A stretch of 63,804 nucleotides of DNA, filler included, from Octopus bimaculoides (lineage: Eukaryota): the NCBI RefSeq assembly GCF_001194135.2. It is 6 parts of 6 records of this genome, joined end to end, with 100 filler letters (N's around TTAATTAATTAA, not from the genome) between each part and the next. Parts side by side here need not be neighbours in the genome. Positions count along the whole stretch, not along the records: positions 24,020 to 48,754 come from NC_068984.1; 5 more parts are not named here. One strand, 5' to 3'. This document shows positions 28,319-30,721 of this stretch, piece after piece (within the stretch, counting starts at the first letter, position 1; every line of letters begins with the position of its first letter). Below the pieces are notes generated by a model. That model did not search any database. It had not been told where the DNA came from and worked only from the letters and a program-made list of their open reading frames with translations. Both the position numbers and the translations under genes were made by a program.

Positions 28319-30118
28319 AAAACAATTTCAACCACTTAATCAAAATACTTCCTAATTCTTGATTATTTATGAAACTACTTGAAACATAGGAAGTATATTT
28401 TCATTAGAAATATGGTGACAAAAATGTTAAGCAATGTGCACAAGAAAACATAGTGACTTTCCTTGTAGTTTAAGGAATTAGTGTGTCCATACTATCAGTA
28501 ACAAAAGGTTAAGAGTCACAAGAAATTAGTGAGATCGCTCTTCCTGACAGATCAGCTGGTAATGGGAATCAGCTACAAGCTTTTCTCTTCGAATATCTGT
28601 CTATTGTGAATTCTTTTATTTCACAGAGGACATTGGAGAAGGCTTTTCACAGTATTTTATAGGTGTATGTATGACTGTGTGATTGAAAAATTTACTTCCC
28701 AATCACAAAGTTTCATGTTCAGTCCCATTATGTGGCATCTTAGGCAAATGTTTTGTACTACAGTCCTTGGTGGACCAAAGCCTTGTGAGTGGATTTACTA
28801 CATGGAAACTGAAAGAAGCTCATTGTGTATATATAATGGAGCTGTTGTATGTGTGTGTGTGTGTTCTTTTTCTTTTATTTGTTTCAGTCATTTGACTGTG
28901 GCCATGCTGGAGCACCACCTTTAGTCAAGCAAATCGACCCCAGGACCTATTCTTTGTAAGCCTAGTACTTATTCTATCAGCCACTTTTGCTGAACCGCTA
29001 AGTTATGGTTTGCCAAGCAATGGTTGGGGGGACAAACACACACACACACATACACACACCTATANNNNNNNNNNNNNNNNNNNNNNNNNNNNNNNNNNNN
29101 NNNNNNNNNNNNNNNNNNNNNNNNNNNNNNNNNNNNNNNNNNNNNNNNNNNNNNNNNNNNNNNNNNNNNNNNNNNNNNNNNNNNNNNNNNNNNNNNNNNN
29201 NNNNNNNNNNNNNNNNNNNNNNNNNNNNNNNNNNNNNNNNNNNNNNNNNNNNNNNNNNNNNNNNNNATATATATATATATATATATATAGGATTGGGCAG
29301 AATAATTATTGTAGAGGCAGTGAAACCCAATGAAGATAAAGTGGAAAGGAGAAACAAGTCTATTGTGTGCTGGTAGGTGATATACTAGAATTAGATAGTG
29401 CAGAGAATCATATCAGAGACTGCTTGAGTAGCAATAAAATAGGTAGAAAGAGGTCACATATGTCGTAGCAAGGCTTGAATTTGTAACCATTAAGTGCATT
29501 TGATGTTTTTACCTCACTCACTCATATGCATGTACACACACACACCACACACAAACTCACACACCTCATACACACACAGTCACACAAACTCACACACAAA
29601 CACACACATACAAACGCACACACACACAGACTCACCCCCTACATACACACTCACACACATGCACAAACTCCCACTCAAACACACACAATTTAATAATGTG
29701 TTTATTTTGCTGACAGGTTGACAGAGTTTGAATTATGAAATCTATTCAGTTTTGACTTTTAAAAAAAGTGTATAGAAAGTTTTCCTTGTTCAAGTGCTTA
29801 ACAAGAGTTGGTTCTAAATTATTGTTTCCTTCATATTTTGGAAAAGTAGAGATTTATTCAAACTATAAAACCTCTTCATTTTATTTCAAATATTCCCTCC
29901 AAAATAGTACAAACTATACTGAAAAATTAGTAAAGCTAGAACTGGTTTCATAAGAATTAATAGATTGAATCAACCCAAGTGATGCCTTTATAAAGTTCTG
30001 CATTGCTGACTCACTGTTGTGTCAGTCTATTTTGGTTACACACCTCAACTCTTCTCTTTCAGTCTTTGAAAGTCAGTTGTTTTCTGTTGTTAGTGTTAGT
30101 TAGCTGCTGACTACTACA

Positions 30119-30721
30119 ATGGGAAATACTGTTTCTAAAGCTGCAGAACAGTTTCTTCACCGAGTTATTGCATGTGGAGCTAAGAAGAAAAAATCACGAA
30201 AATCTGACATGTGCTCTGATAAAACTCCTTTAGAACAACCAACAACTATGAAAAATTCTTCAACTGCTGTTACCAAATCTTGTGTAGCTAATCAAGATAG
30301 AATGGAAAATATTGATGTTTGTGAAAACAATGGGAATATTGAGACAGCTTTAGTTGAGGACTATGTTTTAGTTTCGTCCCGTAATCAACAGAAAGAAAAT
30401 ACAGCTATGTCTGTGGAGAATGTAACTGAAATGAAACCTTCTTCATCAGATATGGATAAATATACTTGTGAAATTAAGCAAAATTCCAAGGAAGAAACAG
30501 TAACCTCTGACCTTGTAAATAAGCAAGAATTAAACTCTTCTACAAAACTACTTCATTCTATAGATGATATTCCTCATTCAGACAGCACTTGTGTAAATCA
30601 AAAGTCCTGCAGTATTTCATCAGAAATATCTTCTTGCAAATCTAACTCTTCTTTCACTCATGTCAGCCAAAGTGTGATGAATCATGTGGATTTATTAAAA
30701 AATGTTGAGGAAAATACTCAG
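30119..30721 (+). CDS. AIMP2: AIMP2 coding exon 1 (atypical 201-aa N-terminal extension, MGNTVSK...EENTQ)
   Basis: 603-nt open frame from an ATG in good context (acaATGg). In-frame TAG 18 nt upstream (30101-30103). Strong acceptor ctcttctctttcag at 30061-62. Donor CAG|GTAAAA in phase 0, compatible with the downstream AIMP2 exons. No homology recognised, so linkage to AIMP2 is inferred from strand, phase and position. Confidence 0.65.

What the first reader, a model, noticed from the sequence alone, without database searches (positions are those of the whole stretch)
30063..30721. AIMP2 with a novel ~200-aa N-terminal extension carrying a myristoylation plus polybasic membrane-targeting signal
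Seen: MGNTVSK fits the N-myristoyltransferase consensus (G2, S6, K7). It is followed by Cys19, a KKKKSRK cluster and a Ser/Asn/Glu-rich, probably disordered region, and it splices in phase into the AIMP2 exons. Established: characterised AIMP2 proteins are about 320-330 aa and start with short MYx(L/V)(K/P) motifs that bind LysRS. This model is 483 aa. Inference: a membrane-anchored scaffold could tether the multi-synthetase complex to membranes (for example for local translation in cephalopod axons), or KKKKSRK could act as an NLS. I found no canonical MY-starting first exon in the sequenced part of the window.
Basis: partly seen in the sequence, partly recalled or inferred. Interest (0 to 1): 0.75.

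Follow-up and report, generated by a model that had tools for sequence, protein, structure and literature searches.

The report
Alternative lipid-anchor first exon of octopus AIMP2
Octopus AIMP2, the scaffold of the multi-tRNA-synthetase complex, has a second, minor first exon conserved in octopuses, argonauts and probably cuttlefish, which replaces the lysyl-tRNA-synthetase-binding peptide with a disordered tail that starts with a predicted myristoylation and polybasic membrane signal.

Summary
The ORF is real: MGNTVSK, Cys19 and KKKKSRK, 201 codons up to a GT donor at 30721. RNA contigs from five runs of two Octopus species join 30721 directly to the AIMP2 leucine-zipper exon at 37592.

This is not the only or the main N-terminus. 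The window is Octopus bimaculoides. The canonical first exon, with two MYYVK motifs, lies about 12.6 kb upstream, outside the piece, and its transcripts are 2-4 fold (contigs) to more than 10-fold (raw reads) more abundant. The MGNT exon is therefore an alternative first exon inside intron 1, and it replaces the LysRS-binding peptide.

The long isoform is already a predicted protein in O. sinensis (XP_029635515.1) and O. vulgaris (CAI9720823.1), but I found no paper on it. An orthologous exon sits in intron 1 of Argonauta, and probably of cuttlefish. M1 G2 N3 T4 K7 C19 G20 and the basic cluster are invariant; the rest evolves fast and looks disordered.

Best reading: a coleoid-conserved, probably N-myristoylated, membrane-associating AIMP2 proteoform that cannot bind LysRS. 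Lipidation and localisation are untested.

The parts
29958..30118 (+). Conserved upstream block: putative promoter plus 5' UTR of the alternative first exon. It contains TATAAA at 29989-29994 and TGACTCA at 30007-30013. There is no ATG between 30020 and 30118.
   Evidence: Part of the 29958-30334 block, one of the few collinear blocks that align between Octopus and Argonauta in this locus. The 55 nt before the ATG are almost identical in the two. The promoter role is inferred from consensus matches only.
30098..30721 (+). Alternative first exon of AIMP2 as seen in RNA. The 5' end is at or somewhat upstream of 30098.
   Evidence: Contigs of X1, X2 and X16 cover 30098/30099/30102 to 30721 and then run into exon 2. 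The same is seen in a second Octopus species, X6 and X7. Raw reads show no coverage upstream of about 30106 or in the intron after 30721.
30119..30721 (+). Coding part of the alternative first exon: 201 codons in phase 0. No Pfam domain; predicted disordered.
   Evidence: Purifying selection is weak: omega 0.62 for Octopus-Argonauta (p=0.02) and 0.42 between two sepiids (p=2e-5).
30119..30139 (+). MGNTVSK, a match to the N-myristoyltransferase substrate consensus (Gly2, uncharged residue 3, Ser6, Lys7).
   Evidence: M1 G2 N3 T4 K7 are invariant in every aligned sequence from Octopus, Argonauta and sepiids. Position 6 is Ser in octopods and Gly in sepiids; both are allowed by the PROSITE PS00008 pattern (own knowledge).
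30173..30178 (+). Invariant Cys19-Gly20, a candidate S-acylation site next to the basic cluster.
   Evidence: Invariant columns. Acylation is inference only.
30182..30202 (+). Polybasic cluster KKKKSRK (residues 22-28): a second membrane signal, or a monopartite NLS-like motif.
   Evidence: K24, K25 and K28 are invariant and K23, K24, K25 and K28; sepiids have RRKKK. The first 30 residues carry net +6 and the rest -11.
30722..30727 (+). Splice donor GTAAAA of the alternative first exon.
   Evidence: The join 30721|37592 is seen in RNA contigs. The CAG|GTAAA phase-0 donor is conserved in O. sinensis, Argonauta and sepiids.
31761..31820 (+). It is not part of the transcript.
   Evidence: It is skipped by all junction contigs and by the O. 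sinensis and O. vulgaris long-isoform proteins. RNA depth there equals the intron background.
37592..37735 (+). Common exon 2: the leucine-zipper region (TLTDPISQLEMQQAAIFARLKRIQDELDKM...). It is the acceptor for both first exons.
   Evidence: Two kinds of upstream sequence meet 37592: the alternative exon, and the canonical ...INKAHAKAD exon. Depth in raw reads is about 50.
39028..39271 (+). Common exon 3: thioredoxin-like half of the AIMP2 GST-homology domain.
   Evidence: PF18569, E 1e-24. Aligns to human AIMP2 in PDB entries 6IY6 and 5A34. tblastn.
41979..42379 (+). Common exon 4: GST_C half of the domain, with the stop codon at 42377-42379.
   Evidence: PF00043, PDB match, tblastn. Identical to O. 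bimaculoides XP_014789430.1.

Best explanation
The stretch is an alternative first exon of the Octopus bimaculoides AIMP2 gene, with its own promoter and 5' end, lying inside intron 1. Transcripts that start here splice 30721 to 37592 and encode a 463-aa proteoform. In it the canonical 51-residue N-terminus, which carries the two MYYVK LysRS-binding motifs, is replaced by 201 residues. The leucine zipper (AIMP1/ArgRS/GlnRS arm) and the GST-homology domain (EPRS and AspRS arm) are kept.

The new N-terminus has a short conserved head: Met-Gly-Asn-Thr-x-[SG]-Lys, a weakly amphipathic stretch, Cys-Gly, and then a Lys/Arg cluster. A fast-evolving acidic Ser/Asn/Glu-rich disordered linker follows.

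The most likely mechanism has three steps. The initiator Met is removed and Gly2 is N-myristoylated co-translationally. The myristate and the basic cluster (possibly helped by acylation of Cys19) hold the protein on acidic membrane leaflets. The long flexible linker lets the AIMP2 core recruit its remaining partners there, without LysRS.

Shown: the exon, the splice, the minor abundance, loss of the canonical peptide, and conservation of the head motif. Inferred: myristoylation, membrane binding and partner choice.
For: - Splice: RNA contigs join 30721 to 37592 in X1, X2 and X16 (O. bimaculoides) and in X6 and X7 (a second species, about 98% identical, carrying an in-frame 3-nt insertion).
- Canonical form: a second, more abundant junction brings ...INKAHAKAD onto 37592. 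Contig depths, alternative versus canonical, are 28.5 v 121.5 in X2 and 6.95 v 14.9 in X1. In raw reads the alternative exon has depth about 2-4 against about 50 for exon 2.
- Position: the window is 100% identical to O. bimaculoides CM046604.1. Canonical exon 1 lies 12.6 kb upstream of the ATG at 30119.
- Other species: long isoforms with the same join exist as predicted proteins in O. sinensis (446 aa) and O. vulgaris (447 aa).
- Argonauta: intron 1 has a 169-codon orthologous ORF (E 1e-23) with the same CAG|GTAAA phase-0 donor and a near-identical 5' UTR.
- Sepiids: intron 1 of Acanthosepion pharaonis has a 216-codon MGNTLGK...SCGNRRKKK ORF with the same donor. It is conserved in three further sepiid sequences.
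- Invariant residues: M1 G2 N3 T4 K7 C19 G20 and K24 K25 K28.
- Footprint: apart from matches to dispersed repeats and one 65-nt intronic block, only 29958-30334 and exons 2-4 align collinearly between Octopus and Argonauta.
- Selection: omega is below 1, with p=2e-5 in sepiids.
- Fold: no transmembrane segment, no Pfam family, AF2 mean pLDDT 42 with no secondary structure.
- Roles of the AIMP2 regions: PMC6760448 and PMC4932449.
Against: - No protein-level evidence. Myristoylation is predicted from a consensus only.
- The basic cluster begins 20 residues from Gly2, further than in Src or MARCKS-type signals.
- The isoform is minor, about 4-30% of AIMP2 transcripts in the runs examined.
- Most of the exon is under weak constraint: omega is 0.4-0.7, and about 0.74 within Octopus from only 27 substitutions.
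- Octopod-sepiid homology rests on a 25-residue match (E 0.004) plus position, strand, exon architecture and composition.
- The true 5' end is not mapped. The conserved TATAAA lies about 105 nt upstream of the contig starts.
- KKKK also fits a monopartite NLS.
Confidence: 0.6

Rival explanations
1. The isoform is nuclear or signalling rather than membrane-bound. The conserved basic cluster acts as a monopartite NLS, or as a nucleic-acid- or phosphoinositide-binding patch. The long isoform then delivers a LysRS-free AIMP2 to the nucleus, in line with the known non-translational roles of AIMP2. Gly2 is either not myristoylated or serves as a Gly N-degron.
For: KKKKSRK and RRKKK fit K-K/R-x-K/R and are conserved. 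Human AIMP2 has non-translational functions when released from the complex (PMC6760448). Unmyristoylated N-terminal Gly is a known degron (PMC13082882).
Against: This reading does not explain why M1-G2-N3-T4 and K7 are invariant over the whole coleoid range while nearly everything else changes. An NLS alone needs no fixed N-terminal Gly. A stably myristoylated protein is usually excluded from the nucleus (own knowledge).
Confidence: 0.15
2. The transcript is a conserved but largely non-functional by-product of an intronic promoter. Selection acts on the DNA or RNA element (an enhancer, promoter, or 5' UTR that regulates the AIMP2 locus) and the protein tail has no specific role.
For: The best-conserved stretch between Octopus and Argonauta includes 160 nt of non-coding upstream sequence. 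Abundance is low. Omega is high over most of the exon.
Against: An open frame of 169-222 codons ending at an in-phase donor is kept in every lineage despite dS of 0.5-0.7 and more. Indels are in frame. Omega is significantly below 1. The invariant residues are codon-level features: the Met-Gly start, Cys-Gly and the Lys/Arg run.
Confidence: 0.12
3. The exon belongs to another gene, or the join is an assembly or gene-prediction artefact.
For: The canonical first exon is missing from the piece, and there are N gaps nearby.
Against: Independent RNA assemblies from five runs and two species contain the junction. The chromosome-level assembly is collinear with the window. No alternative downstream partner was seen.
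Confidence: 0.02

Closest known systems
Predicted long AIMP2 isoforms of sister species: Octopus sinensis XP_029635515.1 (446 aa) and Octopus vulgaris CAI9720823.1 (447 aa)
   Same: Same alternative first exon (about 90% identical over aligned residues), the same direct join to the TL(T/N)(D/N)PIS exon, and the same MGNT.SK...ACGAKKKKSRK head.
   Different: They are automatic annotations carrying only the name AIMP2, or 'hypothetical predicted protein' in the NCBI record for O. vulgaris. They have a 16-17-residue deletion relative to O. bimaculoides. The only O. bimaculoides record found in this search, XP_014789430.1, is the canonical 313-aa form.
Human AIMP2/p38 (JTV-1) and its splice variant AIMP2-DX2
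   Same: The same leucine-zipper plus GST-homology core (PF18569 and PF00043; E 6e-28 to PDB 6IY6 chain C). As with DX2, a transcript variant changes which partners the scaffold can bind.
   Different: DX2 skips exon 2, the leucine-zipper region, and keeps the N-terminus. The octopus variant swaps exon 1, losing the LysRS-binding peptide (p38 residues 1-42 suffice for LysRS binding, PMC4932449), and gains a lipidation-type signal. I found no report of a myristoylated AIMP2.
Plasmodium tRip, a membrane-anchored AIMP that nucleates synthetase complexes (PMC9136112)
   Same: A GST-domain scaffold of aminoacyl-tRNA synthetases located at a membrane. It shows that membrane attachment is compatible with complex assembly.
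   Different: tRip is an AIMP1-like integral membrane protein of a protist. Here the anchor would be a lipid plus a basic patch on an AIMP2 isoform of an animal, and it is only predicted.
Isoform-specific N-myristoylation through alternative first exons, for example c-Abl 1b versus 1a and membrane versus soluble NADH-cytochrome b5 reductase (own knowledge); myristoyl plus polybasic signals of Src and MARCKS (own knowledge)
   Same: Two promoters or first exons give one lipidated and one non-lipidated proteoform of the same core. An MG start is followed by a basic cluster.
   Different: The basic cluster lies 20 residues downstream rather than immediately after the motif. A roughly 170-aa disordered linker follows. 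The swapped-out exon itself carries a partner-binding site.

Membership tests
AIMP2/p38 scaffold of the multi-tRNA-synthetase complex | C-terminal GST-homology domain (thioredoxin-like half plus GST_C half) that pairs with EPRS and binds AspRS | tested here: met
   PF18569 at E 1e-24 and PF00043 at E 1e-6. phmmer E 6e-28 to human AIMP2 in 6IY6 and 5A34 over residues 102-310.
AIMP2/p38 scaffold of the multi-tRNA-synthetase complex | Amphipathic leucine-zipper helix upstream of the GST domain (binds AIMP1) | tested here: inconclusive
   The segment ISQLEMQQAAIFARLKRIQDELDKM is present in both isoforms and conserved among cephalopods. Its equivalence to human residues 55-76 (PMC6760448) is by position. 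Coiled-coil formation was not tested.
AIMP2/p38 scaffold of the multi-tRNA-synthetase complex | N-terminal LysRS-binding peptide with MYxVK-type motifs | tested here: not met
   This applies to the long isoform. The two motifs (MYYVKP, MYYVKQ) lie entirely in canonical exon 1 (P0006 residues 1-51), which the long isoform lacks. No MY motif occurs in the 201-aa replacement. The canonical isoform of the same gene does meet this feature.
N-myristoyltransferase substrates | Initiator Met followed by Gly2, fitting G-{EDRKHPFYW}-x(2)-[STAGCN]-{P} | tested here: met
   GNTVSK in the window. GNT[AVIL][SG]K in every aligned Octopus, Argonauta and sepiid sequence. The pattern is quoted from memory (PROSITE PS00008).
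N-myristoyltransferase substrates | Covalent myristate on Gly2 in vivo | not testable with these tools
   Needs metabolic labelling or mass spectrometry.
Myristoyl-electrostatic (two-signal) membrane anchors | A second signal, either a basic cluster or an acylatable Cys near the N-terminus | tested here: met
   K22-K28 and Cys19 are conserved, and the first 30 residues carry net +6. The spacing from Gly2 is longer than in the classic examples.
Alternative-first-exon (alternative promoter) proteoforms | Two mutually exclusive first exons joined to one common second exon, both in frame | tested here: met
   Both junctions onto 37592 are seen in the same runs. Both exons end in phase 0.
Alternative-first-exon (alternative promoter) proteoforms | An independent transcription start upstream of the second first exon | tested here: inconclusive
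   Contig 5' ends lie at 30098-30102 in three runs, with no reads upstream. A conserved upstream block carries TATAAA. The putative acceptor AG at 30061-30062 is not conserved in Argonauta. No cap-based data are available.
Classical monopartite NLS | K-K/R-x-K/R core | tested here: met
   KKKK at residues 22-25, and RRKKK in sepiids. This is a sequence match only. Import is not testable here.

The most novel reading that the evidence does not exclude
Coleoid cephalopods have kept, since before octopods and cuttlefish diverged, a dedicated lipid-anchored AIMP2 proteoform. It would assemble a LysRS-free sub-complex of aminoacyl-tRNA synthetases (EPRS, AspRS and the AIMP1-ArgRS-GlnRS arm) on membranes. 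That would be the first membrane-tethered synthetase scaffold in an animal, with possible use in local translation or signalling in their large neurons.
Probability: 0.2. Interest if true: 0.8.

Novelty: new variant of a known kind. Interest (0 to 1): 0.55.

Why it matters
AIMP2 is the central scaffold of the animal multi-synthetase complex, and its known variants change the fate of the complex and of the cell. This isoform removes the LysRS docking peptide and adds a conserved lipidation-type head. That would give two pools of scaffold with different partners and locations.

Plasmodium tRip was the only membrane-anchored synthetase complex that my literature searches turned up. An animal example would open the question of spatially organised tRNA charging.

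It also has a practical side. RefSeq gives only the long form for O. sinensis and only the short form for O. bimaculoides, so cross-species comparisons of 'AIMP2' currently mix two proteoforms.

Tried and rejected
- Canonical exon 1 inside the piece: tblastn with octopod N-termini and a 30-nt transcript tag found nothing. It lies upstream, outside the piece.
- A 13-kb read layout was swamped by expressed repeats and showed no gene junctions, so I moved to short stretches.
- Junction read counts at 37592 from raw reads: the loose ends were not printed, so I used depth ratios instead.
- P0001 was not on record for locus retrieval.
- dN/dS within Octopus: too few substitutions to be informative.
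- Homologues of the extension outside cephalopods: none by phmmer against 1.84 billion representatives (the one other hit, an Ig-repeat protein at E 8e-4, is spurious) or by profile search. No Pfam or PDB match.
- The LysRS-binding peptide is too short to retrieve the human AIMP2 peptide structure by sequence.
- The third protein search, meant to sample other molluscs, was dominated by vertebrate AIMP2 and said nothing about molluscs.
- AF2 on a 5-sequence alignment gave only low confidence. This is compatible with disorder but weak evidence.
- Exon of another gene, or an assembly artefact: rejected.
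Full report
**What is at the coordinates**

The + strand carries an ATG at 30119 that opens a 243-aa ORF. This is far longer than chance allows in this AT-rich piece: 200 first-order Markov simulations gave a mean longest ATG ORF of 105 aa, sd 19, maximum 169.

The product starts MGNTVSKAAEQFLHRVIACGAKKKKSRK. A CAG|GTAAAA donor follows codon 201, at 30721. There is an in-frame stop at 30101-30103 and no other ATG between about 30020 and 30118, so this is the first AUG.

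**What the RNA shows**

Assembled RNA contigs of three O. bimaculoides runs (X1, X2, X16) cover 30098/30099/30102 to 30721. They then continue with ACACTGACTGACCCAATT..., which is the sequence at 37592. Two runs of a second, about 98% identical, Octopus species show the same join and carry an in-frame 3-nt insertion.

The product is therefore 201 + 262 = 463 aa.

Raw reads from three further runs lie only between about 30106 and 30721. None lie upstream or in the intron.

A second and more abundant class of molecules reaches 37592 from a different exon, ending ...CAAATTAACAAAGCTCATGCAAAAGCCGAC (...QINKAHAKAD). This sequence is absent from the window.

| Run(s) | Measure | Alternative exon | Comparison |
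|---|---|---|---|
| X2 | contig depth | 28.5 | 121.5 (canonical junction contig) |
| X1 | contig depth | 6.95 | 14.9 (canonical junction contig) |
| X21-X23 | raw-read depth | about 2-4 | about 50 (exon 2) |

**Where the canonical exon is**

Cephalopod AIMP2 proteins in the database are 310-314 aa and begin with two MY(H/Y)VK motifs. The O. bimaculoides protein XP_014789430.1 (P0006) matches the window's exons exactly.

Its locus in the chromosome-level assembly is 100% identical to the piece, with window coordinate = L002 coordinate + 7516. Canonical exon 1 (MSSSEPSF...MYYVKPYHSF...MYYVKQINKAHAKAD) lies 12.6 kb upstream of the ATG at 30119. It sits beyond a 2-kb N gap and outside the piece.

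The MGNT exon therefore lies within intron 1 and is an alternative first exon. The AG that would make 30063 a splice acceptor is CTG in Argonauta. This argues against its use as an internal exon.

**Already in databases, not in the literature**

The 90% cluster of the canonical protein also contains O. sinensis XP_029635515.1 (446 aa) and O. vulgaris CAI9720823.1 (447 aa). Both begin MGNTASKAAEQFLHRVIACGAKKKKSRK and join directly to the leucine-zipper exon.

Full-text searches found no paper linking AIMP2 to myristoylation, and none on a cephalopod multi-synthetase complex.

**Conservation**

In Argonauta hians, intron 1 holds a 169-codon ORF, MGNTISKATDQFIHRFLTCGAKKKKSSKS... It matches at tblastn E 1e-23 and ends at CAG|GTAAAA in phase 0. 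The 55 nt before its ATG are almost identical to those of Octopus.

Across the whole locus, apart from matches to dispersed repeats and one 65-nt intronic block (32147-32211), only 29958-30334 and exons 2, 3 and 4 align collinearly between Octopus and Argonauta.

In the cuttlefish Acanthosepion pharaonis, intron 1 holds a 216-codon ORF, MGNTLGKASQRISDQFLSCGNRRKKK..., on the same strand and with a CAG|GTAAAT phase-0 donor. Three more sepiid sequences carry it.

Invariant positions across all of these are M1 G2 N3 T4 K7 (A8), C19 G20 and K24 K25 K28. The remainder is barely alignable.

| Pair | dS | dN | omega | p (omega below 1) |
|---|---|---|---|---|
| O. bimaculoides - Argonauta | 0.70 | 0.43 | 0.62 | 0.02 |
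| A. pharaonis - second sepiid (L005) | 0.50 | 0.21 | 0.42 | 2e-5 |
| O. bimaculoides - O. sinensis, alternative exon | 0.06 | 0.05 | 0.74 | too few changes (27) |
| O. bimaculoides - O. sinensis, common exons | 0.11 | 0.02 | 0.22 | not tested |

The octopod-sepiid link rests on a 25-residue match (E 0.004) together with position, strand, exon architecture and composition. I rate it probable, not proven. RNA for the cuttlefish splice could not be queried.

**Nature of the extension**

- No Pfam family and no PDB sequence match.
- No homologue outside cephalopods among 1.84 billion representative proteins. The only other hit, an Ig-repeat protein at E 8e-4, is spurious.
- No hydrophobic segment that could span a membrane. 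Net charge is +6 in the first 30 residues and -11 in the rest. Residues 3-18 have a moderate helical hydrophobic moment in all three lineages.
- AlphaFold2 on a shallow alignment gives mean pLDDT 42 and no secondary structure. This is compatible with disorder.

**Mechanism**

In human AIMP2, the N-terminal region binds the LysRS dimer, and residues 1-42 suffice for this. The leucine zipper (residues 55-76) binds AIMP1 and, through it, ArgRS and GlnRS. The GST domain binds EPRS and AspRS (PMC6760448, PMC4932449).

In octopus the MY motifs are confined to canonical exon 1. The long isoform should therefore lose LysRS and keep the other arms.

The conserved head fits the N-myristoyltransferase consensus and is followed by a basic cluster and an invariant Cys. 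The best-supported mechanism is a two-signal anchor, lipid plus electrostatics. It would place a LysRS-free AIMP2 core on membranes through a flexible linker of about 170 residues.

The exon, the splice, the abundance and the conservation are shown. The lipidation, localisation and partner set are inferred.

Rivals:
- The basic cluster acts as an NLS.
- A conserved intronic promoter drives a transcript whose protein is irrelevant.
- An artefact. This one is effectively excluded.

**Comparison and verdict**

The gene is a bona fide AIMP2. The long isoform fails one defining AIMP2 feature, the LysRS-binding peptide.

In kind it resembles other alternative-first-exon proteoforms that gain a myristoylation signal, such as c-Abl 1b and cytochrome b5 reductase (own knowledge). 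In concept it resembles the membrane-anchored synthetase complexes of Plasmodium tRip (PMC9136112).

It is a new variant of a known kind. The gene model and the claim that it extends a normal AIMP2 are wrong. The canonical MY exon exists upstream and is the major form.

Noticed in passing
window 33737-34428 (- strand): Two adjacent ORFs (91 and 151 aa) look like remnants of a mariner/Tc1-type transposase inside AIMP2 intron 1. The first has helix-turn-helix matches (HTH_32 at E 1.6e-5, below Pfam's cut-off).
   Followed up: partly
window 32429-33322, 34664-35110, 39134-40474, 40922-41368: Intronic repeats with RNA depth 10-100 times that of the AIMP2 exons. Reads join opposite strands (39518 with 41351; 40320 with 41172). 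These are expressed dispersed repeats with inverted copies flanking the exon 3-4 intron, and they swamp any wide read layout.
   Followed up: no
window 32147-32211 and L003 19016-19080: A 65-nt block (78% identity), collinear between Octopus and Argonauta, in the intron between the alternative exon and exon 2. Function unknown.
   Followed up: no
window 29989-29994 and 30007-30013: TATAAA and TGACTCA (an AP-1-like heptamer) sit in the upstream block conserved with Argonauta. They lie about 105 and 90 nt before the RNA contig starts, so the true start may be upstream of 30098.
   Followed up: partly
database records for AIMP2: Annotation is inconsistent between species in the records found. O. 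bimaculoides has only the 313-aa canonical form, O. sinensis only the 446-aa long form, and O. vulgaris both. Argonauta and Acanthosepion have the exon in the genome but no long-isoform record.
   Followed up: yes
window 30134 (run X7, second Octopus species): One contig carries 29 nt of unrelated sequence (ACTATGTTATATCGTGGGAGGTGCTTCTA) in front of 30134. This is either a chimeric assembly or another upstream join in that species.
   Followed up: no
window 29494-29721 and the edges of the N gaps at 29065-29266, 34826-34835 and 47646-47952: (CA)n and (TA)n microsatellites flank the assembly gaps. They give spurious His/Thr- and Ile/Tyr-repeat ORFs.
   Followed up: no
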